Positions 6,125 to 45,195 of a stretch of DNA of 64,000 nucleotides are shown in pieces. The notes under the pieces are model-generated. The model was not told the origin of the DNA and made no database searches. It saw only the letters and a list, made by a program, of their open reading frames with translations. The DNA is taken from IMG/VR virus record IMGVR_UViG_3300043411_000942, positions 62,001 through 126,000 of that record, one strand, 5' to 3'. Position 1 is the first letter of the stretch. The number at the start of each line of letters is the position of its first letter. A program made the position numbers and the translations under genes.

Positions 6125-6832
6125 ATGTTCACCATTGAGAAGACTGAGCCTAGTGTGCGGTACCGATTGCTCTTGGTACCCATCGAACAAATTTCGCCGT
6201 CTATGTACAGAAAGGACCGGCTACATGTTACCACCTCTGTGGCTCAGTATGCTACGCGTGAGGACATAGTTGCGCTGATACCTGAGGACCGAATCAGCCC
6301 AACAAGCCCTCCGTCACCCGAATGGCACGCATGGCATCAGACCCAGATGGCGATCGATTACCACCGTCGAGTTGACGAGCCTGGATCGGATACCGTACGC
6401 CGCCTAGCGAGGGAGCGAGATACAGCTAACGTTGAGGTGAAGGCTCTGAAGGCAGAGGTGAAGGCTCTGAAGGCAGATCTTGAGCGTCAGCAAAGTGATG
6501 CTAAGCTTTGCATCGAAGACCTGGAAAGGTCACTCGATTTCCAGACTAAACGTTGCGAGTGGCAAAGGTCAGAGATGGGGGTCCTAGAGGACCGGGCGGC
6601 AAAGGCCGAGCGGCAATGCGTAGATCGCATTGCCGCTATTCGACAAGAACAATGCCTTTTGACGAAGGCTGTCTCATTGAAGGTGGCCCTAGATATCGCA
6701 CCTTGCTCTGAAAATCCATATTGTTGGAGGATTCTCTACAACAATAAAGGGACGCACGGTATTTCAGCAGGTGACCCCTCCGAGGTCCACAGTAAAGTGG
6801 CTTCAATCCTAGCTAGATTCGAAAACAGTTAA
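6125..6832 (+). CDS. coiled-coil protein with 21-nt tandem duplication (EVKALKA x2)
   Basis: long ORF, start uncertain (6074 or 6125); TAA stop lies inside the next promoter -35. Confidence 0.65.
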   Translation: MFTIEKTEPSVRYRLLLVPIEQISPSMYRKDRLHVTTSVAQYATREDIVALIPEDRISPTSPPSPEWHAWHQTQMAIDYHRRVDEPGSDTVRRLARERDTANVEVKALKAEVKALKADLERQQSDAKLCIEDLERSLDFQTKRCEWQRSEMGVLEDRAAKAERQCVDRIAAIRQEQCLLTKAVSLKVALDIAPCSENPYCWRILYNNKGTHGISAGDPSEVHSKVASILARFENS

Positions 6833-6856
6833 ACCTCCACCACCCAGTTACGTAGG
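6828..6856 (+). promoter_or_regulatory. class-1 promoter whose -35 contains the upstream TAA stop
   Basis: GTTAAA-N17-CGTAGG-N7-ATG. Confidence 0.85.
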
Positions 6857-6863
6857 GTTCTAC

Positions 6864-7127
6864 ATGACAACCCGAGTAAAGTCTGCTGAGGAAATGGCGC
6901 TTGAAACTGAATTCCAGCGTCGACGGAACATGGTGAGCTGCAACGTCCTCTATGAGCAGGGGGGCAAGCGCTCCACGTCCGTTACCCTTACCGTTCTTGG
7001 TGTAGAGATCGGTACCCGTACCGAGTTCACCACTCGCGGTAAGGTGTCCTCGGTCCTCATCACTCTCCCTTCGCTGGACCGCCTTAACGCGCTCCTTTCC
7101 CTTCCTGTCGCTGGCACGGAAGCTTAG
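6864..7127 (+). CDS. hypothetical protein
   Basis: ATG behind promoter 6828-6856. Confidence 0.7.
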   Translation: MTTRVKSAEEMALETEFQRRRNMVSCNVLYEQGGKRSTSVTLTVLGVEIGTRTEFTTRGKVSSVLITLPSLDRLNALLSLPVAGTEA

Positions 7128-7235
7128 CCACTTGGGTAATTACGGGAACCGGGTGTGGGTGTACCACTGAAGTGTGTCCCGGATCTGGGAAGCCCACCAT
7201 TCTCTAGGATTCTTGGAGGGGGAGGTTAAAGACCT

Positions 7236-7436
7236 ATGAGTAAAGTGAGGCAATACGTAACCACGGGAGCCAGTTTATACGATACGGACGATCGAGGGTA
7301 TAGGGTGTACCTAGAGCCAAGGATGGTACCCGACCCCGTTCCTCCTGACTTTACTGACACCTGGGATCTAAAGTCGTCCATTGAGTATGACGGCAACGTT
7401 CTTTGGTTTTGGCAAAGGGATGTGGAGTCCAGTTAA
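7236..7436 (+). CDS. hypothetical protein
   Basis: 66 aa ORF ending in TAA of next promoter. Confidence 0.55.
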   Translation: MSKVRQYVTTGASLYDTDDRGYRVYLEPRMVPDPVPPDFTDTWDLKSSIEYDGNVLWFWQRDVESS

Positions 7437-7467
7437 ACTTCCCCCTCCCATACCCGTAGGTGCTGCT

Positions 7468-7665
7468 ATGTGCGAATGTTATCAAGTTGGAGGTCCGTGG
7501 ATTGCAGAGGACCCAAACTGCCCTACTCATGGAGATGAGGCTCGATCGCGAGCTACCAAAGCTGCCAGTCTTGAGGATGAGGTCGAGCACCTTGAGGCCG
7601 AGGTTGCTCATCTTACGCGAAGACTCGAAGCTTTGGAGCGTGCTGTCTTTGGGAAGACCTTATGA
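7468..7665 (+). CDS. Zn-ribbon plus coiled-coil small protein
   Basis: ATG 7468 behind promoter; CEC...CPTHG. Confidence 0.65.
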   Translation: MCECYQVGGPWIAEDPNCPTHGDEARSRATKAASLEDEVEHLEAEVAHLTRRLEALERAVFGKTL

Positions 7666-7925
7666 AAGCTCGTAACCCGTTGCCATTCGTCACCCCTCCA
7701 TCCAATGGGAGCCGTATCCTCCTGGAGGGTACCAAGGAGGTCCTTGGGTTGTTCTTTGGCTCCTACTCCAGGGACTATCACCTTGCGAGGTATACGCCCT
7801 ACGGTGGAGGCCCTAGAGACACTCTCTGTAGTCAGTACGTTGGCATACTGACCTCCTCGGCTAGTCCCGAAGGCCTCACTTGCAAGATTTGCATCAAGAA
7901 TGCAAGAAAGATTATCAATGCCTGA
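7662..7925 (+). CDS. hypothetical protein
   Basis: ATGA coupling; HLAR...TLCS...TCKIC. Confidence 0.6.
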   Translation: MKARNPLPFVTPPSNGSRILLEGTKEVLGLFFGSYSRDYHLARYTPYGGGPRDTLCSQYVGILTSSASPEGLTCKICIKNARKIINA

Positions 7926-8189
7926 CACGAAGCCTTGGCACCCTATGGATGCCAACCTAGAGCCAGAGAGGGCCGAGAAACTTACCCCTGACATATCTAC
8001 TGAAGTAGGTTGCGAGGAGGGGAGCGCTGATACTCCTGAGGCTGGGGTCGGTTTGGAGACAGTTGCGATCGAGATGCCAGTTGTAATGCTGGAACTGAGC
8101 GAGGGGTACGAACAGTTCCCGTTGCCGTATGATAAGTGGGTTATCTTGGTGACTCGGTTTACTAGGCTCCACAACAAGCTCAAGTAGTC

Positions 8190-8993
8190 ATGTACAAATA
8201 CACAGCACACATACGCCTACTTGATACTTCAAAGATCACGTACCGTCCTGAGCTGCATGGAGAGCTTACGCGAAGCTCTGTGTTAGCCACGCGGCTCAGT
8301 AAAGCCCTTGCCAAGGTGATTTTTGCCTCCAAAGCCCTCCAACTTCTAAAGACTGAGGAAGCTAGAGCCGCACACAATAGGGCGGTTCTAGCTCTACTCA
8401 AAGTGGAGGGAGAGCTGCTCGAAAATGTAGAAAAGTGCGGGAGTCAGAGGCGCTCGGTAACCACAACCCGAACCGCAGTTACTACCACTAATCCAACGTG
8501 GCCTAAGCACAAAGCCCCTGACCCAGTCCGTAAGCATGCGAAACTTCTAGAAGCTGTCTTCCAGCCAGGGGATGGCCCACAGGATCTTGTGGGTAAGCTA
8601 ACGTGTGAGGCTACCCAAGGGAAGCCTCTCGAAGAGCGCTTCTGGAGAGAAATTGTAGGCTTCCGTAGGCTACGGCACGACACTCGTCTCACTGTGGCCA
8701 AGAAATTCCTGGAGAGATCCGTGACATCCCAGATTACTCATGTAGCAATCAAGTTTGGTCTTCGGGTAGAGTGTCTCCCCCGACCCAATCGACACCACCA
8801 TGTGCTGCATGCCATCAACCTCAAGGGTGGTCGCAGAGAAGAGCGTGGGGTGGAGGGGTTTCTCACAAGCGATGGAGACTTTCTCACTCGGGAAGAAGCG
8901 TACACGCTTGCGAAGCGAAATGGGCAGTTTGCACGTCAAATGAGGCCAGGTTGCTATGACGGCCCCAAGCTTTTCTCAGAAGACCTGTGGTAG
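8190..8993 (+). CDS. two-domain hypothetical protein with a common phage C-terminal domain
   Basis: C-terminal RHHHV...EGFLTSDGDFLTREEA...LFSEDLW, recalled from phage proteins. Confidence 0.7.
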   Translation: MYKYTAHIRLLDTSKITYRPELHGELTRSSVLATRLSKALAKVIFASKALQLLKTEEARAAHNRAVLALLKVEGELLENVEKCGSQRRSVTTTRTAVTTTNPTWPKHKAPDPVRKHAKLLEAVFQPGDGPQDLVGKLTCEATQGKPLEERFWREIVGFRRLRHDTRLTVAKKFLERSVTSQITHVAIKFGLRVECLPRPNRHHHVLHAINLKGGRREERGVEGFLTSDGDFLTREEAYTLAKRNGQFARQMRPGCYDGPKLFSEDLW

Positions 8994-9030
8994 TCGTTAA
9001 ACTTCCAGCTTGGGCTACGTAGGAGACTAC

Positions 9031-9252
9031 ATGTACATATACCTATTGAAGCAGACCTCTCAAGCGAGTTTCGACAACAACGAAGCCTTCGTTGTTCGAG
9101 CAAAGAACTTCACGGAAGCTCGCGAAATCGCCTCAAAAGCATGTGGAGATGAGGGGCCTCATCTGTGGTTGGATAAGAATCGGTCTTCCTGTAAGCGCGT
9201 CAACCCAGTGGGTAAGTCGGAACTTATCCTGAATTCCTACAAGAGCGGATAA
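9031..9252 (+). CDS. hypothetical protein
   Basis: ATG 9031 behind promoter 8996-9023. Confidence 0.7.
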   Translation: MYIYLLKQTSQASFDNNEAFVVRAKNFTEAREIASKACGDEGPHLWLDKNRSSCKRVNPVGKSELILNSYKSG

Positions 9253-9258
9253 CCCTAC

Positions 9259-9528
9259 GTGGCTGCCATAGAAGAATCATTCAAGAAGCGTGGATTTAAG
9301 CCTCAGGACATCCTTAAGGTTGCTGAGAAGCACGTACGACTCTACGAGCGTAGAATCGCCCGAGGTGGGTCTTGGGTGCGTATTGACGAGTGTCAAGCAC
9401 TCCTACAGCTTTGGCAAGGCGTTGTCCGAGGGCAAGGAGAAGTTCTCACGCCAACCCAGATGTGCGAGATTTTGGATGCGGATGACGCAGGTGAATTCGA
9501 GGAATTCACCATAGTAATCAAAGAGTAG
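9259..9528 (+). CDS. hypothetical protein
   Basis: 89 aa ORF in + block. Confidence 0.55.
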   Translation: MAAIEESFKKRGFKPQDILKVAEKHVRLYERRIARGGSWVRIDECQALLQLWQGVVRGQGEVLTPTQMCEILDADDAGEFEEFTIVIKE

Positions 9529-9530
9529 CC

Positions 9531-10088
9531 ATGCTCCCCCCTACCGTTTTATACTACTCACGCTTTCTGCGAGAACCCGGCCCGGTCTTTGACGCGCTCC
9601 GGGTTGCTTCGGCTTGGGAGCAGAAGAGCGTCACAATCTATGGGAAGTCGATTCCGCAGCCTCGCTTGATCGCGTGGTACGGGGACCCTGGTACCTCGTA
9701 CACCTACTCGGGGCTCAGAGTAGACCCCAACCCCTGGTTCCCTGCCCTGGCCTCTCTGAAGGCTGAGGTTGAGCGAGCTACGGGAGCCACCTTCAACTCG
9801 GTACTTCTTAACCTGTACCGTAACGGGTCGGATTCCGTAGCCTGGCATGCAGATGATGAGCCAGAACTTGGCTCGAATCCTACGATCGCCTCGGTAAGTC
9901 TTGGAGCTACACGTAAGTTTCAGCTCAAGCACAACCTTACCAAGGAGGTTTTCAGTGTAGACCTAACCTCAGGTAGTCTTCTCGTGATGTCTGGGAGCAC
10001 CCAGGAGACTTACAAACACGCGGTTTTGAAGACGACACGTCCTGTTGGAGAAAGGATCAACCTGACGTTTAGGCGAATTTTCAGTTAA
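9531..10088 (+). CDS. alkB: AlkB-family 2OG-Fe(II) dioxygenase (ALKBH2/3-like)
   Basis: QPRLIAWYG, NSVLLNLYRNG, WHADDE (HxD), YKHAV, RINLTFR. Confidence 0.93.
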   Translation: MLPPTVLYYSRFLREPGPVFDALRVASAWEQKSVTIYGKSIPQPRLIAWYGDPGTSYTYSGLRVDPNPWFPALASLKAEVERATGATFNSVLLNLYRNGSDSVAWHADDEPELGSNPTIASVSLGATRKFQLKHNLTKEVFSVDLTSGSLLVMSGSTQETYKHAVLKTTRPVGERINLTFRRIFS

Positions 10089-10112
10089 GCCTCCCGCAAG
10101 GGGATCCGTAGG
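10084..10112 (+). promoter_or_regulatory. class-1 promoter for the HicA-like gene and tRNA-Lys
   Basis: GTTAAG-N17-CGTAGG. Confidence 0.8.
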
Positions 10113-10132
10113 GACTCTCAGAGGCACTGAAA

Positions 10133-10345
10133 ATGTCGGACTATCGAAAGTGGATCAAGAAGGTGGTTGCGCTTGTGAGTAAGCTCGGCTGGAAGGTCGA
10201 CCAGAAGAACCACTACAAGTTCAAGTCCCCTAATGGCGGCACGACCGTGATCGCGCCTTGTACTCCCAGTAGTTACAACGCCATGTGGACGGTTCGACGA
10301 GATTTTCGTAAGGCTGGGCTCGAATTGGACATGAGCAGCCTCTAG
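10133..10345 (+). CDS. HicA-like dsRBD-fold RNase/toxin homolog
   Basis: LGWKVDQKNHYKFKSPNGG..V..P.TPS...RRDFRKAG resembles HicA; no HicB nearby. Confidence 0.6.
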   Translation: MSDYRKWIKKVVALVSKLGWKVDQKNHYKFKSPNGGTTVIAPCTPSSYNAMWTVRRDFRKAGLELDMSSL

Positions 10346-10352
10346 TGTATTC

Positions 10353-10425
10353 GGGACCTTAGCTCAGTTGGTAGAGCTGCGGACTTTTAATCCGTAGGTC
10401 GTGGGTTCAAGTCCCACAGGTCCCA
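10353..10425 (+). tRNA. trnK: tRNA-Lys(UUU), CCA not encoded
   Basis: GGGACCT/AGGTCCC acceptor; D arm GCTC-AGTTGGTA-GAGC; anticodon arm GCGGA-CTTTTAA-TCCGT; T arm GTGGG-TTCAAGT-CCCAC. Confidence 0.97.
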
Positions 10426-10580
10426 CTAACTGGATACTGTCTTAGCGAAGGTGTGCACCCTGAGCTATGATCGGACTCCAGCGAGGAGCTACCCGTTCCC
10501 ACGTAGATAGAGTGAGTCGCCCATCCCCCACTGGACTTGTTAAGCCCAACCGGATGGTCAACGACCCACTTAAACGGTAG

Positions 10581-10841: not shown

Positions 10842-11165
10842 ATGTCAAAAAAGAACGTGAGGCAGAAGTTCAGGGACTTGGTCTTCACTCGGGACAAGCA
10901 TGTTTGCCGGGTCTGTAGGGCCTTAGGTGAGCTAGATGCTCACCACATTACAGATCGCAACCTGATGCCGGGTGGGGGCTATGTGCCGGGGAACGGAATT
11001 TCCCTGTGCAAAGATTGTCACTTAAAGGCAGAGCATTTCCACTCAACAGGTGAGAGCTTGCCAGGGTTTTCTCCAGAGGACCTGTACCAACTAATCGGTT
11101 CAAGTTATGCCGAAGCTCTTGAAGCTTCGAGACTCCATGAGAGATTTAAGCACCTCTCTGGTTAA
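10842..11165 (+). CDS. HNH endonuclease
   Basis: RDKHVCRVC, LDAHHI, NGISLCKDCH. Confidence 0.88.
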   Translation: MSKKNVRQKFRDLVFTRDKHVCRVCRALGELDAHHITDRNLMPGGGYVPGNGISLCKDCHLKAEHFHSTGESLPGFSPEDLYQLIGSSYAEALEASRLHERFKHLSG

Positions 11166-11195
11166 GCCGCACTAGCAGAATCCGTAAGGCTTTAC

Positions 11196-11558: not shown

Positions 11559-11600
11559 CAACAGGAGGTTCGCCGAACCTCCTTCAACCCCTCCCAGGAT

Positions 11601-11828: not shown

Positions 11829-11929
11829 TTCCAGTTAAGCTCTCACCTTGAAGGTCCGTAGGTACCCATATGGAAGACGAGAGAGTTTGCAACTGGACGA
11901 TTGACTCCGAGTAAGACAAGGAAACTAAC

Positions 11930-13752: not shown

Positions 13753-13781
13753 GTTAAGGCTTACAGGACTAGTTACGTAGG
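13753..13781 (+). promoter_or_regulatory. class-1 promoter
   Basis: GTTAAG-N17-CGTAGG-N7-ATG. Confidence 0.85.
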
Positions 13782-13974: not shown

Positions 13975-14094
13975 AAGACACTTACAAGGATAGTTGGAAC
14001 ACGTCCTTCCGACTGCTCGTGCAACAAGAAGGCGTTGTACGAGGAGAAGAAGATTTAGGTTAAGACTGAACCCTCCTCCACCGTAGGGGTTCAT

Positions 14095-15693: not shown

Positions 15694-15733
15694 AATTTAG
15701 TTAAGCCCGGACCCTCTACCTACGTAGGTCTCT

Positions 15734-17823: not shown

Positions 17824-18646
17824 ACCAGGCGAAACCATCAAAGTTGCAGTAGCCAACAACGTCCTTCTAGAGGTTCCCATTTGGGAGGCTCACTTTCGAG
17901 GATCCAATTGGATGGCTGTAATTAACGTAGACGGGTCCAGTCCTGGAGGGCTGAGTCGTAGGTTTATGCCAAGGGGTAAAGGGGATTGCTTCTACTTGAT
18001 TGAGCAACTCCAGCTCTTCGACCCGATCGAATTTGGTGCGGACTACACGACCTCGGTTGGAACTAAGAAACGAGACCGTTGGTACGGTGTGGTCACTGCG
18101 GTCACAGACGGGCACCTAAGCATCGAGAGGGCCTCGACAGGGGTAGCGGCCGTCCTGAGAGCCAAAGAGGCTAGAGAGTCCCCTAGAGATAGAGCAATGG
18201 CCCTTCGTGAGACCCTTCAGGCTCACCTAGACCAGGTGGTTGCCATTGAGAGGGAAATTCACGAGCTTGACCGGACCCCCGTGGAGTCTGAAGTGCCAGC
18301 AGATCTACCTACGGTACCGTTTTCCGTAGAAGACTACCAAGCGCCTGCGGTCCCACCTACAGCTGAGCAGCTAGCCGATTTGTTTAGCGAAGTCGAGCGT
18401 ACAAAAGATTGCGTTGTGAGAGTTTGGGTATCCCCAACGAGTGTTCGAGCCTTGAAGTCACTTCCAGGCTTTACCCTGTGCTCTAGCCTCACCCCTGAGG
18501 TCTTTGGAAGTCTCTGGGGAGCAACGTTTTTAGTATCCCCAAAGATCCCACATGGGAGGGTATACCTTACCCCAGGCAAACTTGAGGATGCCGATCTGGT
18601 ACCAGAGTGGACCCCGGTACCAGAAGAATTGCAATCTTGGGGTTAA
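17804..18646 (+). CDS. fusion of a phage hypothetical N-domain with a capsid-protein-like C-terminal segment
   Basis: N: SPGGLSRRF..IEFGADY..RWYGVV. C: LADLFSEVER..VVRVWVS..GSLWGATFLVSPKIPHGRVY. Confidence 0.55.
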   Translation: MTTKSTKPGETIKVAVANNVLLEVPIWEAHFRGSNWMAVINVDGSSPGGLSRRFMPRGKGDCFYLIEQLQLFDPIEFGADYTTSVGTKKRDRWYGVVTAVTDGHLSIERASTGVAAVLRAKEARESPRDRAMALRETLQAHLDQVVAIEREIHELDRTPVESEVPADLPTVPFSVEDYQAPAVPPTAEQLADLFSEVERTKDCVVRVWVSPTSVRALKSLPGFTLCSSLTPEVFGSLWGATFLVSPKIPHGRVYLTPGKLEDADLVPEWTPVPEELQSWG

Positions 18647-18676
18647 AGATTCCTGACCCTCTCCGTAGGGTAGAGT

Positions 18677-20814: not shown

Positions 20815-21235
20815 TAGGTAATCTACTTAGCACATGCAGAATAGGTGCGGTTCGACACGCCTAGCCACTTTTGCAGTCTAATGTAGAGCTTCACCAAAGG
20901 GGTTGCCCCCCAACGCACGGGTCTAAAGTAGGAGCCGTAGTAAAATTCGTCTAACATCCGGGACTACTTACGCTAACTCCGCTTGGTAGTCAAATGCTAG
21001 CATGCAGAAAGGCCTACCCGTTTTTAGGTAGGCCTTCTTCCAGGCAGGTGAAGAGACTTGTGGTCTCTTCCGAGGAGCCTAACTCTTGATCAGAAAGCTA
21101 GGGTTCCTCTGCAAGCGGACTCCCTCCGCACGATTATATTCATTGAGGTCTCTTTCATCGCTACAAGGTTAACCTCAGGTAGGACCGAGTCCATACTCTA
21201 GAGGTGCTCTGGTTAAGGTGGCCAACCTCTCCAGT
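20815..21235 (-). ncRNA. candidate ~420-nt structured ncRNA with its own class-1 promoter
   Basis: No ORF over ~25 aa on the - strand; bracketed by promoters 21243-21271 and 20779-20807; hairpins 21009-21036, 21050-21070, GGGG-GCAA-CCCC at 20899-20910. Confidence 0.5.
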
Positions 21236-21242
21236 CATGTTA

Positions 21243-21271
21243 CTTACGTTCGTCTCGTCCTACGCTTTAAC
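21243..21271 (-). promoter_or_regulatory. class-1 promoter upstream of the non-coding structured region
   Basis: GTTAAA-N17-CGTAAG. Other - copies: 20779, 21843, 22871, 24048, 26502, 27663, 29100, 29930, 31173, 32617, 35123, 36455, 37531, 44186, 44844, 60480, 62757, 63090. Confidence 0.8.
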
Positions 21272-21835: not shown

Positions 21836-21843
21836 ACAATCCC

Positions 21844-22104
21844 CTACGGGTTCGAGGTGATCTTGCTTAACTTTTCTTTCAGCTCTTGAGCAGAAATGTC
21901 GAGTTCGATCAAGCTGCTAAAGAGTGCGAGAACTTCGAGTGTCTTAGAGTGACTCAAAGTAACCTCGTCGAAGGCTGTCTTTGTCGTAACCGCTAGGTGC
22001 TTCCACCTCTCGGTCTCGGATCGCCAGTAGCTAACTTGGGCGCTTTTGTACATGTAGGTCAGCCCGATAGTTACAAGCAAACCAGCGAAAATCAAAACTA
22101 CCAC
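21844..22104 (-). CDS. N-terminal TM protein
   Basis: hydrophobic N-terminus. Confidence 0.55.
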   Translation of the reverse strand: MVVLIFAGLLVTIGLTYMYKSAQVSYWRSETERWKHLAVTTKTAFDEVTLSHSKTLEVLALFSSLIELDISAQELKEKLSKITSNP

Positions 22105-24041: not shown

Positions 24042-24070
24042 GCCTACCCTACGTAATGCAAACGCCAGCG

Positions 24071-24280
24071 TTAACTTGTTTTTGTGTACACCCTAGGCTT
24101 GTACACCCAGTACTCGTTCGACACGTAACCTACAATCGCAGTACCTGTAGCTATCTTATCGTAGGCGATTAGCCAGTCTTTGATCTTCCTCTCAGCTAGC
24201 ACCATGGACAACTCAGACAAGCTCTCGGCTTGGAGCGTAACATCTCCCTGTAGGCCTCCACGGTAGTCGGCGAACACCAT
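24071..24280 (-). CDS. hypothetical protein
   Basis: TGATG coupling at 24280. Confidence 0.5.
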   Translation of the reverse strand: MVFADYRGGLQGDVTLQAESLSELSMVLAERKIKDWLIAYDKIATGTAIVGYVSNEYWVYKPRVYTKTS

Positions 24281-27656: not shown

Positions 27657-27686
27657 ACAGACCTTACGTACCTCGTACTGAGACCT

Positions 27687-28166
27687 TTAAGTGTAGCTGG
27701 CAAAAAGACGATCGGCTGCCTCTTTTACCGAGAGGCCTTCCTCAAAGACAGTAAAGGGTTGCCCCACTGGGACTTTCTTCCGCTTGACTCTCTTATACTC
27801 TACCACGTCCACGCACATAAGTACCTGAGCAAGGTCGTTTGGAGGGTCTTGGGGGGCTCCAAAAATGAACCGGGCGTTTGGGACTGGAGCGAGCATCAAG
27901 CTGTGGTGAGACTCGAACATCTTCTTTATAGCCTGGAACCTAGGTTTCAGGTCTACTTGACTATCCACCTTGAACGTCGACTTTGAGGGCTGACGGTCTT
28001 GCTCAGCCTGTTCGGCTATGAGCTTCAGACAAGTCTTGCACTTCGGTACGAGGTGAGGGGCCACGTACTTAGGGTCAATGTTACGACCACACCACATGGC
28101 GTCCTCGGTTTCAAGTAACGCATGAGCAACGAGGTGCCCCGAGACGATACCTAGAATCCACTTCAT
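27687..28166 (-). CDS. Zn-binding N-domain hypothetical protein
   Basis: VAHAL..WCG..CKTC; ATGA coupling at 28166. Confidence 0.6.
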   Translation of the reverse strand: MKWILGIVSGHLVAHALLETEDAMWCGRNIDPKYVAPHLVPKCKTCLKLIAEQAEQDRQPSKSTFKVDSQVDLKPRFQAIKKMFESHHSLMLAPVPNARFIFGAPQDPPNDLAQVLMCVDVVEYKRVKRKKVPVGQPFTVFEEGLSVKEAADRLFASYT

Positions 28167-29922: not shown

Positions 29923-29958
29923 GTGAAGTCCTACGTAGCGGAGTTGTGGGGATTTAAC

Positions 29959-31166: not shown

Positions 31167-31205
31167 AACTAACTTACGGATGGGACACTCAAACCCTTAA
31201 CGAGA

Positions 31206-32593: not shown

Positions 32594-32661
32594 AACACTG
32601 GCCTTTCTTACTAGTACCTACGAAAAGCCAGTGCTTGGACTTAACTACTTTCTACCGATCG

Positions 32662-33594: not shown

Positions 33595-33730
33595 GTTATC
33601 GACTCATTGGGTCATGAGGGGACGAGAAGTTCCCTACTCGGAGACCATTCTTCAGGGTGACAATGGGGATGCTCATACTCACGCCTACGGATTCTTGCAG
33701 GTTAGGCTTAAGGTAAAACTGACGTGCCGA

Positions 33731-35115: not shown

Positions 35116-35150
35116 GTCTAGCCCTACGGAAGTAGAGAGAGTAAGCTTAA

Positions 35151-36311
35151 CTAAAATCTCGCCTGTTGGGCCAGGTCGATACACAGGCCGTCTATTCTGT
35201 GCAGGTCTGGCTTCTTAGGGAGCTTCGACACCTTAGCCAGCTCGGTTAGCTCCACGTCTTGCTTCGCTGCCCACTCGACAAGCTCGTAATAGTTCCAAGC
35301 CCCTGCTCGAATGCGTAGCAGGTCCTCAGCGTCCGGACGTCGCACAACAACCTTACCTTCAGTGAGGATTTCGCGGCACATTCGTAGGAGTCTCACTAGG
35401 TGCATGGCATGTTTCGTGTCGTACCCAAACTGCTCTTCTAGTTTCGCACGATCTGGATTGCGATTCTTCTTCCAATCTTGAAATTGCTGCCACTCTCGCA
35501 GTTTACTCGTGTAGCGTCGCTCCAAGTCGAGCAACTCAATGAAGTTCGTTGAAAACCCAAGGGAGTTCGCTGCTGCGTTCCAGGTCTTCTCTTCGACGTC
35601 TTTCCAGGACCACTTGGTGATCTCTAGCAGCCTACGGTAGAACTCGTCCTTAATGGATTGCCGGTTGGCTGGACCAAGCTCCTCTAGCTCGTGCCAATTC
35701 CACTCGTCCATGCGCTTATTGATTGTAGCGGAGGCAGCTGCAAGCTGATCTGCCGGGATAAGCGTGTGCTCAGGTAGATTAAACTCTGCTCGTGTTGGAG
35801 GCGCTACAGGAGGAGTCTTAATCCATCTGTAGTGAGTGTTGATTCTCTTGAGTTGTTGAGTCGCATACCCACTGAACGTGTGCTTTGCACGCTGAGAGAG
35901 GAACAGCTCGCGACTCCCCAGGAGGGTTGTCCCCAATGGGGACACGACCAGGTGGTCACTTTCGTCCGTGTAGAGGATCTCAAGAACGTTTGGATTACAC
36001 TCAGCCGCAAGTTTCATGAACTTGCGGAGTTCGAAGATCGTCAAGTCAGGCTCGGACTGAGTGACCTGCTCTACCGTGTTCAAAAACCCTAGGTAGTACT
36101 CACGCGGAGCGATCATGACTCCGCGTAGATCAAGATCGCTTGTAGGGAGGTTCGTCCCATAGGCGTGACTACCGTGACGAGTCAGGTAGATTGTCCGACT
36201 CGGTACCCACGATAAGTTACCTGAATACACGGGCTTCCAATCAAAGAGAAGCGTACTCTTGACTGGGATCAAGTCACTCCTTGGTGTATCCATGGAACCA
36301 CCCTTCTCCAC
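35151..36311 (-). CDS. Pol-beta-superfamily nucleotidyltransferase (Nuc-transf/YcgL-like)
   Basis: HGSHAYGTNLPTSDLDLRGV, NPNVLEIL, YDTKHAMHLVRLL. Confidence 0.9.
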   Translation of the reverse strand: MEKGGSMDTPRSDLIPVKSTLLFDWKPVYSGNLSWVPSRTIYLTRHGSHAYGTNLPTSDLDLRGVMIAPREYYLGFLNTVEQVTQSEPDLTIFELRKFMKLAAECNPNVLEILYTDESDHLVVSPLGTTLLGSRELFLSQRAKHTFSGYATQQLKRINTHYRWIKTPPVAPPTRAEFNLPEHTLIPADQLAAASATINKRMDEWNWHELEELGPANRQSIKDEFYRRLLEITKWSWKDVEEKTWNAAANSLGFSTNFIELLDLERRYTSKLREWQQFQDWKKNRNPDRAKLEEQFGYDTKHAMHLVRLLRMCREILTEGKVVVRRPDAEDLLRIRAGAWNYYELVEWAAKQDVELTELAKVSKLPKKPDLHRIDGLCIDLAQQARF

Positions 36312-36852
36312 GCGTGTCCGGACGCTGGCAGTGGGCCTGAGCCTCAGCTAGACTCAGGCCTCGCTTACCTCGCACAGCCTTGGGTGGGCCATTGAAGGTA
36401 AACTTGACGATCTTGTATGTATCGTTCGAGGTAGGCTTGCTGCTCATAAGCCCACCTACGGAAAGTAGAGCTGGGCTCTTAACTCCTTTCTCCACCTCAA
36501 GTTTTATGTACGCAATACATGCCGCCTGGAGCTTTGAGAGGTACTTTCCACATTCTAAGCCATGGAAATGTAAGTCTTTTTTGGGGGATCCTATGGCTGA
36601 CTCTAGAGTTACAGCCATCTGCATCGCTGCCTCCACAAGCTCTTGCGTAACGGCACGTTTACGGTTCGGAGTTAGTCGGAGGATACGAGCGGCTGGGAAA
36701 TCTTCCTGGGCGACTCGGCAAACATCTTGAGCTTCCTCAAGTTCGTGCGCTCCCCAACGTTTCGGCTTAACCTGCATCCCAAAGTAGGGGCCCCCAGGCT
36801 TCCCCGAGTAGGACAGAACGTAACCTAGTAGTTCTTGAGACTTGCGGCCCAT
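36274..36852 (-). CDS. read-through fusion ORF containing a nested small gene (36274-36447) with its own promoter
   Basis: class-1 promoter at 36455-36483 inside the ORF with in-frame ATG 36447; C-terminal YKIVKF..GLSLAEAQAHC..WFHGY. Confidence 0.65.
   Translation of the reverse strand: MGRKSQELLGYVLSYSGKPGGPYFGMQVKPKRWGAHELEEAQDVCRVAQEDFPAARILRLTPNRKRAVTQELVEAAMQMAVTLESAIGSPKKDLHFHGLECGKYLSKLQAACIAYIKLEVEKGVKSPALLSVGGLMSSKPTSNDTYKIVKFTFNGPPKAVRGKRGLSLAEAQAHCQRPDTRGEGWFHGYTKE
36455..36483 (-). promoter_or_regulatory. class-1 promoter nested inside an ORF
   Basis: GTTAAG-N17-CGTAGG-N7-ATG, in frame. Confidence 0.8.
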
Positions 36853-37490: not shown

Positions 37491-37588
37491 TGACTAGACA
37501 CTGACAATCCTCGCACCAACCCATACGACCCCTACGATTTTCCCACTTAGAGGTTTAACCTCGCAATGTTAGGATCGTAGTTACTAGT

Positions 37589-39559: not shown

Positions 39560-39899
39560 GCTAAGTACCCCAATCGACCTACCAGACTTTACACATCTGT
39601 CCGTGCCGGAGCTAACGTCCCTCCGGAATCACATTGCGATGCAGACAAAGGAGGCCAGAAAGAAGGCCAACGTAGCCATAGCTAAAACAGGCTCACCTAC
39701 CCTCAAGTCTCTTTGGATGAACTACGTTAGCCTACGTTCGGATACGAGTGCTGAGGATCGTCGAGCCACTAGTAAGCCTTTCTACAATGAGCTTTTGCGG
39801 CACCCGATAGCCTTCCTTGCTTACTCCTACGTGAACTCTCTCCTGATCCTGGATCAAGCGATCGTTCAGGACATGCTACGTAGGTCAAAAGTAGGTTAA
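39549..39899 (+). CDS. hypothetical protein
   Basis: TAA stop inside next promoter -35. Confidence 0.55.
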   Translation: MTDELSTPIDLPDFTHLSVPELTSLRNHIAMQTKEARKKANVAIAKTGSPTLKSLWMNYVSLRSDTSAEDRRATSKPFYNELLRHPIAFLAYSYVNSLLILDQAIVQDMLRRSKVG

Positions 39900-39932
39900 A
39901 CCTTCCACCAAAGATTACGTAGGGGTTAGCAT

Positions 39933-42647: not shown

Positions 42648-43880
42648 TCACGAGATGCCCAAGTATCGCATAGCTACTCGCGTCGTTAGGGGTTCGGAGA
42701 ACTTACTCCCAAGTTCCACCTCAACCTGAGCTTCAAGGGCTTGGGGGTTCAAGGTAGGGTTTGCGAGTAGTTGTTGGCGTGCCACCTGGAGTACTACGTT
42801 TCTCTCTTTCGGGGGAATCGAGTACTTGGCGAACAGCCTCTGTTGGTCAACAGGAGGCTTCTTGAGAGCCTCTACAAGAGCTACACCGTCTGAGGGGGGT
42901 AGCGCAAGAAGAAGCACCCTCAGTCGCTGCTGAGCAGCTCTATCGAGGAATGATAGAGGGGTTCGGATAACCCAACCAAGGTCAAGCAAGTCCAGCAACA
43001 GCTCAGCTTGCTTGTCATTCACATTCCTGCCAAGGGCCGCAGCAAAACCTGGCTCTGCCTCCAACATCTCCTTGATAGCGTCCGACAACCCCAACTGCAC
43101 TAGCAGCTCAACGCTCTTCCTTGGGGCAGGTCCCCCCAGGATATCCCCTACGAGGATTGAGCGCACAGCATCCCACGGCATTTTCTTGAGGCTTGGAGCA
43201 TTCTTTCGAATGCTGGCTACCATGTCCGGAGGAATCTTGAATCCGTACTTCGCTACGAACTTGATTGCACGTAGCATTCGGGTGGGGTCGTCTGAGAAGG
43301 TCTTGTCTGGATTCACCGGGGTCTTGAGCAACCTCTCTTCGAGGTGCTGCTTCCCTAGTCCCGTGAGGTCCAAAACCTCAGCTCGATCTGGACCGTGCTC
43401 AAGATCCAGTAAGCGCCACAACAGCGTGTTGAAGGTGAACTCACGCCGCTTGAGGTCCTCTTCGATGGTCGCAGGTTCCACCATGTGGGGCTTGTAGCCC
43501 TTACCACCCTCTCCGCCATAACTCTCCTTACGAGCGTTGGCAATCTCGATTACCTCGCCCTTTAGGTCATGACCGTCAAGGATCCAAGATTCCGAGATAG
43601 AGAGGATTGCGACCCCGTACTGATTGGTCGTCAGGTTGCATCGAGCGGGAATGAACTCCGAAACCTTCTTGGCAAACCAATCCGAGTCTCGGCCCTTCCC
43701 AGCAGCAACGCTGTCAAATACAACGTCGATGTCCTTGATGGGCTCCTTGAGGATCCAGTTTCGGACTGCCCCGCCTACAACGTAGACGTTCTCTGCAACA
43801 CCCAAGGATCGTGCCACCTTGGACAGGAACTTCATCAGGGCGACAGATCGATCGTGTAGGGAAGATGCGGTAATCATCAT
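42648..43880 (-). CDS. cca: class II tRNA nucleotidyltransferase (CCA-adding / poly(A) polymerase family)
   Basis: YVVGGAVRN, KDIDVV, EDLKRREFTFN, FSDDPTRMLRAIKF; no HD domain; C-terminal RVAMRY. Confidence 0.88.
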   Translation of the reverse strand: MMITASSLHDRSVALMKFLSKVARSLGVAENVYVVGGAVRNWILKEPIKDIDVVFDSVAAGKGRDSDWFAKKVSEFIPARCNLTTNQYGVAILSISESWILDGHDLKGEVIEIANARKESYGGEGGKGYKPHMVEPATIEEDLKRREFTFNTLLWRLLDLEHGPDRAEVLDLTGLGKQHLEERLLKTPVNPDKTFSDDPTRMLRAIKFVAKYGFKIPPDMVASIRKNAPSLKKMPWDAVRSILVGDILGGPAPRKSVELLVQLGLSDAIKEMLEAEPGFAAALGRNVNDKQAELLLDLLDLGWVIRTPLSFLDRAAQQRLRVLLLALPPSDGVALVEALKKPPVDQQRLFAKYSIPPKERNVVLQVARQQLLANPTLNPQALEAQVEVELGSKFSEPLTTRVAMRYLGIS

Positions 43881-43912
43881 CGTAGTTCCAAGCTTGTGAG
43901 TTAGAGCAGAGG

Positions 43913-44176
43913 CTACCGAAACTGGTAGGAGAAAACCTCTCCCTCCTCCTCTAAGAGTCTCTTATAGTACTTAATTTGCTTTTCGACCCCTTGTACAGGG
44001 CACCCCTTGAAGTGCTTACCTGCTACACTCAAGGCTGGGTCGGTAATCCCACACTGCTTACATTTCCAGTAGGGGTTACCCTTACCGCTTCGAACGTGGT
44101 TCACATCCAAAAAGTATTGAAGGTCTGTTATACGAGACCTCAACCGAACACTTCTGGGGATGTGGTTCTGTCTCAT
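43913..44176 (-). CDS. Zn-finger hypothetical protein
   Basis: ATG behind promoter 44186-44213; CKQCG..HFKGC. Confidence 0.65.
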   Translation of the reverse strand: MRQNHIPRSVRLRSRITDLQYFLDVNHVRSGKGNPYWKCKQCGITDPALSVAGKHFKGCPVQGVEKQIKYYKRLLEEEGEVFSYQFR

Positions 44177-44215
44177 ATGGTACACCCTACGAAAGGTAAC
44201 GGTGTAACTTAACCG

Positions 44216-44542
44216 ATGGCTCTAAGAATTCCACCAGTAACTCAACTAATTCGAGAGTTCCTAGCTGAAAACCCAGGCTCTACCGCCACTCAAGTTGCTA
44301 ACGGTATTGGACTAAAGTCCGCCAGCATCTCGTCTAAACTTACAGCTCAAGTTAACGAGGGGAAGCTGATCCGTGTAGCTGGAGAAGGGGTACGTGGAGG
44401 GTATGGGTACTATCTACCCCCCCCACGTATCCGCCTTCTAGTCCCCCGTACCCTACTAGGTGGGACAGACTTTTCAGCGCTGACTTTGAACAAAGTCCCA
44501 GTCACTCTGAGCATCCGCCATCGTCATCCCAACGATAGCTGA
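44216..44542 (+). CDS. winged-HTH protein (C8 tract, C-terminus uncertain)
   Basis: IREFLAENPGSTATQVA..ISSKL..GKLIR; GGTGTA-N9-ATG. Confidence 0.7.
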   Translation: MALRIPPVTQLIREFLAENPGSTATQVANGIGLKSASISSKLTAQVNEGKLIRVAGEGVRGGYGYYLPPPRIRLLVPRTLLGGTDFSALTLNKVPVTLSIRHRHPNDS

Positions 44543-44822
44543 CTCGAAGAAGTGCTCGTTCTTGCGCTCAGCCTCCATCTCAGCGCTCTCGGGCTTCGTC
44601 TCCGGGTGGAAGATCTCCCGGTAGTACTGCTTCGTGGCCTCTCGCTGGCTCTCAAGCGTCCCAGGGGGGCACTTCGTCACGGAGGCGCTCACCACCCCAT
44701 CAACCTCCTGGACCTTGCCGTTCTTGACGGAACGGCAGTAGGACTTCGCAAGAGTCTCCGTGGGGAAGGTTGCGGAACCGGTGGAGCCATTCTTCTGAGT
44801 GAACGTAACGCGGAAGGCCATG
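44474..44822 (-). CDS. hypothetical protein
   Basis: ATG 44822 (MAFRVTF); promoter 44844-44872. Confidence 0.65.
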
Positions 44823-44871
44823 TGGACACCTCTTTCAAGTCTCCCTACGTAAGTCACGGCTGACGAGTTAA

Positions 44872-45195
44872 CTACTTTTTAGAACCCAGATCAAAACCAA
44901 GCCTCAGTAGATGCAACACGAGCCACTCTGCATCCGCCCATTGGACCTTGGTCTCGATAGCTGTAAGTTGAGGTGCGAGACCAACGCGAAGATCTCCTAC
45001 CTGTAAGTAGTTGTAGCTTCGATCCTCAGAGCGACGGACCACTGCTGAGGCTACGTCCCGCAGGGGAAATGGTTCGTTTGGGGTTAGAAACGACTGGAGG
45101 CTCTTTAGAGCCTGGTCTCGTTCGGGGGAGGGCTCAGACCCTGGGGATCCCTCGGCAGTAAGGGTGGAGATGAGGATTTCTAGTTCTTTACGCAT
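44872..45195 (-). CDS. hypothetical protein
   Basis: GGTGTA-N10-ATG. Confidence 0.55.
   Translation of the reverse strand: MRKELEILISTLTAEGSPGSEPSPERDQALKSLQSFLTPNEPFPLRDVASAVVRRSEDRSYNYLQVGDLRVGLAPQLTAIETKVQWADAEWLVLHLLRLGFDLGSKK

What the first reader, a model, noticed from the sequence alone, without database searches (positions are those of the whole stretch)
6828..44872. Promoter -35 doubles as the upstream stop codon: shuffle-ready gene cassettes
Seen: the TAA in GTTAA is repeatedly the stop codon of the preceding gene (ends at 6832, 7436, 10088, 11165, 18646, 21267, 39899, 44872), so promoter-plus-gene units abut with no spacer. Established: T4-like phages exchange accessory genes through recombination at repeated early-promoter elements. 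Inference: the repeat is both promoter and recombination handle, which would explain the mosaic of small genes.
Basis: partly seen in the sequence, partly recalled or inferred. Interest (0 to 1): 0.6.

Follow-up and report, generated by a model that had tools for sequence, protein, structure and literature searches.

The report
Huge-phage promoter repeat, probably leaderless genes
The repeat is a real, lineage-specific promoter used about 60 times by an uncultured huge phage, probably making mRNAs that begin at the start codon. Its TAA acts as the upstream stop codon only as often as chance predicts, and gene gains and losses do not break at it.

Summary
The window is part of a 233-kb fragment of an uncultured huge phage with GC 52%. 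No T4 capsid family (Gp23) match was found. The motif is real: A/T-rich stretch, aGTTAAg, N18, tACGTAGG, N6, Y, ATG. There are 27 strict copies in the window against 0.04 expected, 59 in the record and 46 in a 380-kb relative.

It behaves as a promoter. It always points with the downstream gene. Its two boxes differ at 1-2% of sites between the two phages, against 9-14% in the spacer and flanks. It also precedes tRNA genes and a candidate structured RNA. An ATG lies exactly 7 nt after the second box in 36 of 59 copies. Copies without that ATG show a pyrimidine-purine step at the same place. This predicts mRNAs with no leader.

The -10 box resembles ECF-sigma promoters (CGTA). No phage RNA polymerase was found. 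Two adjacent divergent sigma-like genes sit behind one copy.

However, TAA is the upstream stop in 11 of 32 and 10 of 23 testable cases, which is the one-in-three frame expectation.

The recombination idea fails. Of 87 segments unique to one phage, only one is flanked by the motif on both sides, and clean deletions join at microhomologies.

The parts
277..305 (+). promoter copy. Spacer 18, ATG at 313. The upstream ORF 17-277 stops at TAG 275-277, which overlaps the G of GTTAA.
1373..1401 (+). promoter copy. Spacer 18, ATG at 1409 opening 80 codons.
1702..1730 (+). promoter copy. Spacer 18, ATG at 1738 opening 87 codons.
2020..2048 (+). promoter copy without a near ATG. It lies inside a 104-bp stretch that is absent from relative G001.
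3171..3199 (+). promoter copy. ATG at 3207. The upstream gene stops 10 nt earlier.
4359..4387 (+). promoter copy. ATG at 4395. The upstream ORF 4129-4359 stops at the TAG of TAGTTAA.
5196..5224 (+). promoter copy. ATG at 5232 opening 51 codons.
6828..6856 (+). promoter copy. TAA 6830-6832 is the stop of ORF 6074-6832. ATG at 6864.
7432..7460 (+). promoter copy. TAA 7434-7436 is the stop of ORF 7236-7436. ATG at 7468.
8996..9023 (+). promoter copy. Spacer 17, ATG at 9031. The upstream gene 8190-8993 stops 7 nt earlier.
10084..10112 (+). promoter copy with a long leader of 20 nt that holds AGAGG. ATG at 10133. TAA 10086-10088 is the stop of ORF 9531-10088.
11161..11188 (+). promoter copy. Spacer 17, CGTAAG. 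TAA 11163-11165 is the stop of ORF 10737-11165. ATG at 11196.
11834..11862 (+). promoter copy. The ATG at 11870 opens only 14 codons, so the product is unclear.
13753..13781 (+). promoter copy. ATG at 13789 opening 61 codons.
14059..14087 (+). promoter copy. ATG at 14095 opening 78 codons.
15700..15728 (+). promoter copy. ATG at 15734, 5 nt after the box.
18642..18669 (+). promoter copy. Spacer 17. TAA 18644-18646 is the stop of ORF 17804-18646. ATG at 18677.
21243..21271 (-). promoter copy. Its TAA (21269-21267) is the stop of ORF 21267-21638. It drives the candidate non-coding RNA listed below.
20950..21236 (-). candidate structured non-coding RNA, about 200-280 nt, transcribed from the copy at 21243-21271. 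Paralogue at G000 61039-61275; counterparts in G001.
   Evidence: 11 of 48 predicted pairs keep pairing through changes on both sides. No Rfam match.
21843..21871 (-). promoter copy. ATG at 21835. The upstream ORF 21844-22104 reads through the -35 box and spacer and stops at the TAG inside CGTAGG.
24048..24075 (-). promoter copy. Spacer 17. Its TAA is the stop of the ORF ending at 24071. ATG at 24041.
27663..27691 (-). promoter copy with the variant -35 box CTTAA. Its TAA is the stop of the ORF ending at 27687. ATG at 27656.
29930..29958 (-). promoter copy. ATG at 29922 opening 122 codons.
31173..31201 (-). promoter copy. CGTAAG, ATG at 31166.
32617..32645 (-). promoter copy with a long leader of 23 nt that holds AAAGG. 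ATG at 32593 opening 234 codons.
33684..33712 (-). promoter copy with the variant -35 box CTTAA. The ATG opens only 26 codons.
35123..35151 (-). promoter copy. ATG at 35115 opening 242 codons. The upstream RlaP-family gene 35151-36311 stops at the TAG of TAGTTAA.
36455..36483 (-). promoter copy embedded in frame inside ORF 36274-36879. It may be an internal promoter giving a 57-codon product from the ATG at 36447.
37531..37559 (-). promoter copy. The ATG opens only 12 codons.
39895..39923 (+). promoter copy. TAA 39897-39899 is the stop of ORF 39549-39899. ATG at 39933 opening 247 codons.
44186..44213 (-). promoter copy. Spacer 17, ATG 9 nt after the box.
44844..44872 (-). promoter copy with a long leader of 22 nt that holds AGAGG. 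ATG at 44821. The upstream ORF 44872-45210 stops at the TAG before TTAA, not at the TAA.
45213..45241 (+). promoter copy. CGTAAG, ATG at 45249. It is divergent from the copy at 44844-44872.
60480..60508 (-). promoter copy in front of the operon of two sigma-like genes. ATG at 60472.
59309..60472 (-). divergent sigma-70/ECF-like gene, 387 aa from the start codon that the motif predicts.
   Evidence: TIGR02937 E = 1e-7, below its cut-off. Language-model look-alikes are sigma clusters.
58458..59282 (-). second divergent sigma-like gene, 274 aa.
   Evidence: ECF-type NCBIfam E = 3.5e-4. Atlas score 0.95 to Sigma70_r2 clusters. Profile against PDB: best hit a sigma factor, E = 0.02. Best fold matches are ECF sigma H and L, but weak.
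62757..62785 (-). promoter copy. ATG at 62749, the start of the Ku-domain gene 61973-62749.

Best explanation
The repeat is the promoter of one transcription class, probably early or middle, of an uncultured huge phage.

Anatomy. It is bipartite: an A/T-rich stretch, a -35-like box aGTTAAg, an 18-nt C-rich and G-poor spacer, and a -10-like box tACGTAGG.

Who reads it (inferred). The most likely reader is the host core RNA polymerase carrying an alternative, ECF-like sigma factor. The best candidates are the phage's own divergent sigma-like proteins, two of which sit directly behind one copy of the promoter.

Where transcription starts (inferred). I predict a start 8 nt after the -10 box. In about 80% of copies that base is the A of an ATG, so most of these roughly 47 transcription units would give leaderless mRNAs without a Shine-Dalgarno sequence. 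The remaining copies drive tRNA arrays, a structured RNA, or genes with a 19-25 nt leader that does carry a GAGG-type ribosome-binding site.

The stop codon (shown). Genes are packed so tightly that the upstream gene runs into the promoter. The TAA inside GTTAA ends it whenever it happens to be in frame, which is one time in three. Other frames end at the TAG of TAGTTAA, a few codons earlier, or at the TAG inside CGTAGG. The overlap is therefore a by-product of compaction and not a designed joint.

Gene flux (shown for one pair of genomes). Gene gain and loss in this region happens at gene boundaries in general, largely through microhomology-mediated deletion and replacement. It does not happen by exchange between promoter copies.

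Shown: the motif statistics, the conservation, the geometry, the frame test and the breakpoint test. Inferred: promoter activity, the start site, leaderless translation and the identity of the sigma factor.
For: Motif excess: 27 against 0.04 expected in the window; 59 and 46 copies against 0 for the reversed-pattern control. Every copy is co-oriented with the gene that follows.

Box conservation. At 30 orthologous copies in G000 and G001, chosen without requiring the motif in G001, differences are 1.7% in the -35 box and 1.0% in the -10 box. They are 9.4% in the spacer, 14% upstream and 9% in the coding sequence.

Start-site geometry. An ATG lies 4-9 nt after the box in 47 of 59 copies and exactly 7 nt after it in 36. 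Forty of the 47 open at least 40 codons, and the base before the ATG is a pyrimidine in 43 of 47. In the 12 copies without a near ATG, base 8 after the box is a purine in 12 of 12 and base 7 a pyrimidine in 10 of 12. The pyrimidine-purine step is found at that offset in 10 of 12 copies, against 0-3 at other offsets.

Non-coding targets. Copies precede tRNA genes, for example at record position 127651 before tRNA-Tyr at 127691, and a candidate structured RNA that ends in a hairpin and T-run. Long-leader copies carry GAGG or AAGG.

Polymerase and sigma. No phage RNA polymerase family was found. The sigma-70 consensus is not enriched. Sigma-like genes. CGT in the -10 region is typical of ECF promoters, and CGTA is sigma-W selective (PMC5758882).

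Relatives. Distant relatives that keep the sigma-like operon lack this motif. They carry a related one, T-tract-GGTTGARG-N15-17-CGT, with the ATG 12 nt after the C. In L138 and L139 it also lies upstream of the sigma-like operon.

Frame test: 11 of 32 and 10 of 23 against one third. Breakpoint tests.
Against: There are no RNA data.

The -35 box lacks the AAC that is typical of ECF promoters.

All sigma-like matches fall below curated cut-offs. The fold matches are weak (Foldseek E about 0.3, model pLDDT 67).

If the phage's own sigma reads the motif and is itself expressed from it, something else must fire the first round. That could be a host sigma or a protein carried in the virion, and it is not identified.

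The related motif in distant relatives was defined after seeing the data and rests on a handful of sites.

The host is unknown, so I cannot say whether it translates leaderless mRNAs well.

Gene calls came from a crude home-made caller.
Confidence: 0.6

Rival explanations
1. One reading: the repeat is both a promoter and a site of homologous recombination, like the PeSLs of T4-type phages. Promoter-plus-gene cassettes would be excised, inserted and swapped by exchange between copies.
For: The region is clearly plastic. G000 and G001 differ by 87 unique segments of at least 100 bp in the part that carries the motif. About ten homology blocks resume 1-30 nt upstream of a copy. One G001 segment, 66255-66532, is flanked by copies in register. 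There is a non-significant trend towards more breakpoints at motif-bearing junctions, odds ratio 1.7. PeSL-mediated shuffling is published for T4-type phages (PMC2839356, PMC4122927).
Against: Breakpoints follow gene boundaries, not the motif. Fourteen of 117 lie within 40 nt of a copy, against 19.5 expected for random gene edges, and the Fisher test gives p = 0.12. Sixty-one of 87 unique segments have no copy at either end, and only one has copies at both. Clean deletions join at microhomologies. For example, the 4.9-kb difference at window 4597-9506 joins at CACC and removes four promoter copies. Copies share only 61-76% identity over about 40 nt, whereas PeSLs are conserved over about 100 bp. 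No stem-loop is present.
Confidence: 0.1
2. The motif is read by a host sigma factor, either an unusual housekeeping sigma or a host ECF or stress sigma, as for classical early phage promoters. The phage's sigma-like genes would then serve later promoter classes.
For: The motif drives small genes of unknown function, tRNAs and the sigma-like operon itself, which fits an immediate class that needs no phage protein. The late region lacks the motif and shows a different enriched word, AAGCTCG.
Against: The boxes do not resemble TTGACA and TATAAT, and the sigma-70 consensus is depleted. Across 2.9 million viral contigs, only this lineage has multiple copies. Across 185,579 species genomes there are only single hits at the chance level. 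Relatives with diverged sigma-like proteins have a correspondingly diverged motif.
Confidence: 0.22
3. The conserved part next to the ATG is a translation signal: GUAGG acting as a weak Shine-Dalgarno sequence at fixed spacing. Alternatively it is an RNA-level processing site and not a -10 box, with transcripts starting elsewhere.
For: AGG lies 7-8 nt before the ATG, which is a workable Shine-Dalgarno spacing. Transcripts reading through from upstream promoters would need some way to start translation at these ATGs. There are no terminators between units.
Against: The same two boxes at the same spacing precede tRNA genes and a non-coding RNA with no ATG. The distant GTTAA box is as conserved as CGTAGG. 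Copies with long leaders carry a separate GAGG site. The spacer is C-rich and G-poor and varies in sequence, so it cannot form a conserved RNA structure.
Confidence: 0.05
4. The boxes are binding sites of a phage or host DNA-binding regulator, such as a repressor or activator operator placed beside each start, and not the contacts of the polymerase itself.
For: The information content is very high and the spacing is fixed. Several small helix-turn-helix or sigma region 4-like ORFs exist in both phages.
Against: The motif is asymmetric and strictly oriented with transcription. The distances of the two boxes from the ATG (-36 to -32 and -13 to -8) are the canonical sigma contact positions. No other promoter-like signal is present in these junctions.
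Confidence: 0.03

Closest known systems
PeSLs (promoter-early stem-loops) of T4-type phages (Arbiol et al. 2010, PMC2839356; Comeau et al. 2014, PMC4122927)
   Same: A dense repeated promoter in a plastic region full of small genes of unknown function. An A/T-rich stretch lies upstream of the -35 box and holds the stop codon of the preceding gene. The start codon of the next gene lies at the 3' end. About 50-60 copies per genome.
   Different: The consensus is not sigma-70-like. There is no stem-loop or terminator part. There is no Shine-Dalgarno sequence, and the ATG sits at the predicted start of transcription. The conserved core is only 11-15 bases instead of about 100 bp. Indel ends do not fall on it. 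The phage shows no T4 capsid family (Gp23) match.
ECF (group 4) sigma-factor promoters, e.g. Bacillus subtilis sigma-W: TGAAAC-N16-CGTA (PMC5758882)
   Same: Two short, highly conserved boxes at a fixed spacing. The -10 box begins with CGT, here CGTA. A copy precedes the sigma-like operon, as in autoregulated ECF sigmas. The candidate sigma-like proteins give their best, though weak, matches to ECF sigmas.
   Different: The -35 box is GTTAA(G/A) and lacks the AAC hallmark. The spacer is 18 nt as I define the boxes. The sigma-like proteins are larger (274 and 387 aa) and fall below family cut-offs. About 60 targets is a large regulon. No anti-sigma factor was identified.
Leaderless transcription units of Actinobacteria, Deinococcus-Thermus and their phages (e.g. 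Mycobacterium, PMC3898074 and PMC4633059; Thermus phage phiYS40, from my own knowledge)
   Same: The -10 element lies at a fixed short distance from an ATG that would be the first base of the transcript. ATG is used throughout. No Shine-Dalgarno sequence.
   Different: In those systems the -10 is a housekeeping TANNNT. Here it is CGTAGG with a strong -35 box. The host is unknown, and the leaderless state is predicted, not measured.
Phage-specific promoter classes read by phage-encoded sigma factors (SPO1 gp28 and gp33-34, T4 gp55, phiEco32 gp36; from my own knowledge)
   Same: A lineage-specific, highly uniform consensus unrelated to the host housekeeping promoter, with sigma-like genes in the phage.
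   Different: The consensus is different. No experimental link exists between any sigma-like protein and the motif. The class seems to cover early-type small genes and tRNAs and not late genes.

Membership tests
PeSL (T4-type promoter-early stem-loop) | Promoter boxes that match the sigma-70 consensus | tested here: not met
   The boxes are GTTAA and CGTAGG. The sigma-70 scan finds 6 sites against 10.7 expected in window 1-20000, and none coincides with the motif.
PeSL (T4-type promoter-early stem-loop) | A stable stem-loop (terminator or attenuator) within or beside the promoter | tested here: not met
   The 60 nt upstream of the motif fold no better than controls (-13.7 against -13.8 kcal/mol, p = 0.38). 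The spacer is C-rich and G-poor. Terminator-like sites are not enriched.
PeSL (T4-type promoter-early stem-loop) | [quoted passage not shown] | tested here: met
   Positions -8 to -4 are A/T-rich. Upstream stops lie 0-13 nt before the TAA in 27 of 32 cases.
PeSL (T4-type promoter-early stem-loop) | A Shine-Dalgarno sequence and start codon at the 3' end | tested here: not met
   The ATG lies 7 nt after the -10 box, which leaves no room for a Shine-Dalgarno sequence. Only the 8 long-leader copies have GAGG or AAGG.
PeSL (T4-type promoter-early stem-loop) | Indels and replacements between close relatives are bounded by the elements | tested here: not met
   One of 87 unique segments has copies at both ends. 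There is no enrichment over random gene edges. Joints are at microhomologies.
PeSL (T4-type promoter-early stem-loop) | Mini-circles formed by exchange between neighbouring elements | not testable with these tools
PeSL (T4-type promoter-early stem-loop) | The host genome is a T4-type myovirus | tested here: not met
   No Gp23 match in G000 or G001; the control genomes of that search were not phages. The terminase's nearest relatives are an uncultured huge phage and Tunturiibacter phage Tunturi_5.
ECF sigma-dependent promoter | A CGT motif in the -10 region | tested here: met
   CGTA(G/A)G was required by the pattern that defined the copies, so its invariance is by construction. At orthologous sites it differs by only 1.0% between G000 and G001. 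The criterion is taken from PMC5758882.
ECF sigma-dependent promoter | [quoted passage not shown] | tested here: not met
   The -35 box is (a/g)GTTAA(g/a), with no AAC.
ECF sigma-dependent promoter | The cognate sigma gene is preceded by its own promoter (autoregulation) | tested here: inconclusive
   A copy at 60480-60508 precedes the sigma-like operon. The variant motifs of relatives L138 and L139 do likewise. No link between protein and motif has been shown.
ECF sigma-dependent promoter | A group 4 sigma (sigma-2 and sigma-4 domains) is present | tested here: inconclusive
   TIGR02937 gives 31.7 and 43.3 bits against a cut-off of 42.9. The 205-aa protein passes only through its region 4. 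The two window proteins fall below cut-offs. Fold hits to sigma H and L have E about 0.3.
Leaderless mRNA promoter | The transcription start coincides with the A of the start codon | not testable with these tools
   Only geometry is available: the ATG is 7 nt after the box in 36 of 59 copies, and a pyrimidine-purine step sits at the same offset in copies without an ATG. There are no RNA 5'-end data.
Leaderless mRNA promoter | No Shine-Dalgarno sequence and an AUG start | tested here: met
   47 of 59 copies have an ATG 4-9 nt after the box. None of the other 12 has an ATG within 10 nt; they are tRNA-preceding, long-leader or non-coding-RNA copies. Whether a GTG or TTG sits there was computed but not inspected.

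The most novel reading that the evidence does not exclude
An uncultured huge phage of at least 380 kb would run a whole expression class of about 50 protein-coding units, plus tRNA arrays and a structured RNA. It would do so from near-identical promoters read by its own ECF-like sigma factor, and the mRNAs would start exactly at the AUG. That would be a phage-private channel for both transcription and translation that needs no Shine-Dalgarno sequence. The sigma and the promoter would co-evolve across the clade: GTTAA-N18-CGTAGG here, GGTTGARG-N15-17-CGT in relatives. Such a design could let the phage favour its own messages if it also shifts host ribosomes or initiation factors towards leaderless initiation.
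Probability: 0.3. Interest if true: 0.65.

Novelty: new variant of a known kind. Interest (0 to 1): 0.45.

Why it matters
The motif fixes the true start codons of about 47 genes in this record. Examples are 60472 instead of 60541 and 35115 instead of 35184. It also marks operon starts in a genome where almost nothing else can be annotated.

If the predictions hold, this is a compact sigma-promoter pair unrelated to the housekeeping consensus. It would be of interest as an orthogonal expression part. It would also be a rare case of a large phage relying on leaderless mRNAs for a whole gene class.

The negative result matters too. A dense repeated promoter in a plastic region full of small genes of unknown function is not in itself evidence for promoter-mediated shuffling. 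Here gene flux follows gene boundaries and microhomology. A stop codon inside the -35 box is simply what one-in-three frames predicts.

Tried and rejected
Searches that found nothing:
- Megablast of window 6000-12000 against the phage collection gave no match.
- Phage RNA polymerase families PF00562, PF00623 and PF00940 were not found in G000 or G001. The control for PF00940 was uninformative.
- Gp23 was not found.
- Rfam matched only the tRNA in the window and nothing on the candidate RNA.
- A literature search for the box sequences returned only primer noise.

Scans for the motif elsewhere:
- In IMG/VR, only G001 has multiple copies.
- In 185,579 species genomes there were 43 single hits, which is the chance level. 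One locus with two loose copies (L146) showed no blastn similarity to the phage.
- LR745208.1 and Tunturi_5 have no copies.
- A contig carrying a 65%-identical homologue (L066) lacks the motif and has no obvious dense alternative.

Ideas considered and rejected:
- The TAA is selected as a stop codon. Rejected by the frame test.
- A terminator or stem-loop is part of the element. Rejected.
- The CGTAGG box is only a ribosome-binding site. Rejected because of the copies in front of tRNA genes and the non-coding RNA.

Limits and compliance:
- The structure model of the 274-aa sigma-like protein is of modest quality (pLDDT 67), and its Foldseek hits are weak.
- No alternative genetic code was used.

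Full report
**What the window is.** The 64-kb window is positions 62001-126000 of a 232,937-bp linear IMG/VR virus record, which I call G000. Its GC content is 51.7% and CheckV rates it about 49% complete. It has no close match in the phage collection. The record carries phage hallmark genes: portal, prohead protease, a terminase fused to a helicase-like domain, GroEL, ribonucleotide reductase, a UvsX-like recombinase and a clamp loader. It also has an array of 35 tRNA genes just beyond the window. The terminase's nearest relatives are an uncultured 485-kb phage (45% identity) and the acidobacterial phage Tunturi_5 (27%). No T4 Gp23 capsid family match was found. This is an uncultured huge phage with no detected T4-type capsid gene.

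**Observation check.** The repeat is real. GTTAA-N18-CGTARG occurs 27 times in the window against 0.04 expected. With N17-19 there are 59 copies in G000 and 46 in a relative, and the reversed-pattern control finds none in either. At 44872 the stop is the TAG that precedes TTAA. Two more cases, ending at 24071 and 27687 on the minus strand, were not listed.

**Anatomy.** The logo reads as follows: A/T-rich at -8 to -4, (a/g)GTTAA(g/a), a C-rich and G-poor spacer, t(a/c)CGTA(G/A)G, six variable bases, a pyrimidine, then ATG. The spacer is 18 nt in 55 of 69 loose matches. All copies point the same way as the gene that follows. Nearly all lie between 27 and 151 kb of the record, and the structural and replication half has none.

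**Evidence that it is a promoter.**
- A 379,936-bp relative with terminal repeats (G001, IMGVR_UViG_3300020049_006032) is collinear with G000 at 85-99% identity. At 30 orthologous copies, chosen without requiring the motif in G001, the -35 and -10 boxes differ at 1.7% and 1.0% of positions. The spacer differs at 9.4%, upstream sequence at 14% and the downstream coding sequence at 9%.
- The same two boxes precede tRNA genes. For example, the copy at record position 127651 lies before tRNA-Tyr at 127691.
- They also precede a conserved non-coding element of about 200 nt that ends in a hairpin and T-run. The signal therefore acts on transcription and not on translation.
- Sigma-70-like sites and intrinsic terminators are not enriched.
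- No phage RNA polymerase was detected.

**Predicted start site and leaderless mRNAs.** An ATG follows the -10 box by 4-9 nt in 47 of 59 copies and by exactly 7 nt in 36. Forty of these ATGs open at least 40 codons, with a median of 75. The base before the ATG is a pyrimidine in 43 of 47. Many of these ATGs are the first ATG of the ORFs listed mechanically. With the A of ATG as +1, the boxes sit at -36 to -32 and -13 to -8, which is the standard geometry of a sigma-dependent promoter.

There is independent support. The 12 copies without a near ATG (in front of tRNAs, the candidate RNA or long leaders) have a purine at the eighth base after the box in 12 of 12. They have a pyrimidine at the seventh in 10 of 12. 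No other offset shows this step. Copies with 19-25 nt leaders carry GAGG or AAGG at Shine-Dalgarno distance, and the short ones have no room for one. I therefore infer that most of these units give leaderless mRNAs.

**Who reads it.** CGT in the -10 region is the hallmark of ECF-sigma promoters, and CGTA is the sigma-W-selective form (PMC5758882). The -35 box lacks the usual AAC.

The window holds two adjacent divergent sigma-like genes directly behind one promoter copy:
- 59309-60472 (387 aa): TIGR02937 E = 1e-7.
- 58458-59282 (274 aa): an ECF-type family at E = 3.5e-4; language-model look-alikes are sigma clusters; the best profile hit in the PDB is a sigma factor; the best, though weak, fold matches are mycobacterial ECF sigma H and L.
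- A third protein with only a region 4 lies at record 182433-183050.

The 274-aa protein has only four homologues among 5.8 billion proteins. The contigs that carry them keep the two-gene operon but lack GTTAA-N18-CGTAGG. Instead they show a related motif: a T-tract, GGTTGA(A/G)G, N15-17, CGT, with the ATG 12 nt after the C (13 nt in this phage). In two of them it also lies upstream of the sigma-like operon. Enrichment of this motif is modest, and I defined it after seeing the data.

Across 2.9 million viral contigs, only G001 has multiple copies of the motif. Across 185,579 species genomes there are only chance-level single hits. Together this favours a clade-private sigma-promoter pair. A host sigma is not excluded, and something must fire the first round of transcription.

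**The stop codon inside the -35 box.** I took copies whose upstream coding frame is open to within 12 nt of TTAA. TAA is the stop in 11 of 32 (G000) and 10 of 23 (G001), which is indistinguishable from one third. The three frames are used 12, 13 and 7 times. The other genes end at the TAG of TAGTTAA (-4), a few codons earlier, or at the TAG inside CGTAGG (+23). Two frames read through, which suggests internal promoters, for example at 36455-36483. The overlap is a by-product of very tight packing. Only about one gene in four has its own copy.

**Test of the recombination-handle idea.** The G000-G001 comparison gives 117 breakpoints between 27 and 152 kb.
- Ninety-seven lie within 40 nt of a gene junction, although such zones cover only 41% of the sequence.
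- Junctions with the motif are broken in 20 of 59 cases and junctions without it in 44 of 191 (odds ratio 1.7, p = 0.12).
- Breakpoints within 40 nt of a copy number 14, against 19.5 expected for random gene edges.
- Of 87 unique segments of at least 100 bp, 61 have no copy at either end and 24 at one end. Two have one at both ends. Of those two, only one is a real in-register case (G001 66255-66532), and it is a replacement.
- Clean deletions join at short microhomologies. It joins at CACC between the start of one gene and the end of another.
- Promoter copies share only 61-76% identity over about 40 nt, which makes them a poor substrate for homologous exchange.
- A different repeat, a duplicated gene 3' end at 1073-1107 and 1317-1351, flanks one inserted ORF.

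**Comparison with known systems.** The layout resembles the PeSLs of T4-type phages: a stop codon in the A/T-rich stretch, a strong promoter, the start codon, many copies, and a plastic region of small unknown genes (PMC2839356). It lacks their sigma-70 consensus, stem-loop, Shine-Dalgarno sequence and breakpoint association, so it is not a member. It works like an ECF-type or phage-sigma promoter combined with leaderless starts of the kind known from Actinobacteria, Deinococcus-Thermus and some of their phages. I rate it a new variant of a known kind.

**Caveats.**
- Gene calls came from a simple codon-bias caller.
- Only one close relative was available.
- Breakpoints come from BLAST block ends.
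- All functional statements are inferred from sequence.

Noticed in passing
window 20950-21236 (-); G000 61039-61275 (L137:1039-1275); G001 66302-66548 and 83735-84019: A conserved non-coding element of about 200 nt lies directly downstream of promoter copies, with two paralogues per genome. It has invariant hairpin-like blocks (GGTGGCCACC, GGACTCGGTCC, GCGGAGGGAGTCCGC) and ends in a hairpin and T-run. Eleven of 48 predicted pairs show compensatory changes. There is no Rfam match. It is a candidate new phage RNA.
   Followed up: partly
window 58458-60472 (-): Two adjacent, very divergent sigma-70/ECF-like genes of 387 and 274 aa. The operon is conserved in four distant relatives, where an N6/N4 DNA methyltransferase gene follows it. 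The 274-aa protein has only 4 homologues among 5.8 billion proteins.
   Followed up: partly
G000 127,600-145,500 (L005); window 10353-10426: An array of 35 tRNA genes lies just beyond the window, several directly behind promoter copies. One tRNA-Lys lies inside the window and is followed by a strong terminator-like hairpin at 10584-10610.
   Followed up: partly
window 1073-1107 and 1317-1351: A 35-nt direct repeat (91% identical) is the duplicated 3' end of a small gene. It flanks a 63-aa cysteine-rich ORF (1146-1337). At the same place G001 carries a different segment that holds a promoter copy.
   Followed up: partly
window 36455-36483 (-) inside ORF 36274-36879: A promoter copy lies in frame inside a longer ORF. 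It may be an internal promoter that gives a 57-codon C-terminal product.
   Followed up: no
G000 47640-47696 (outside the window): Two divergent promoter copies stand back to back. Their TTAA boxes are separated by a single base (TTAACTTAA).
   Followed up: no
G000 152-232 kb (L001-L003): The late or structural half lacks the motif. The word AAGCTCG is enriched 17-fold upstream of its genes, and hairpin terminators are visible. This may be a separate late promoter class.
   Followed up: no
L138 and L139 (relatives from SRR19905786 and SRR6800334): A second repeated word, TTCTTGTAGAA, stands upstream of several genes in the GC-rich relatives. It is distinct from their GGTTGARG...CGT motif.
   Followed up: no
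window 61973-62749 (-), 42648-43880 (-), 35151-36311 (-), 46516-47505 (+): The window holds a Ku-domain protein, a CCA-adding or poly(A) polymerase family enzyme, an RlaP-family nucleotidyltransferase and an ADP-ribosylglycohydrolase. Together they form an RNA and DNA repair or modification set within the promoter-rich region.
   Followed up: no
window 2020-2048 (+): One promoter copy sits in a 104-bp stretch that is missing from G001. It has no ATG at the usual distance. This is a promoter-only difference between the two phages.
   Followed up: no
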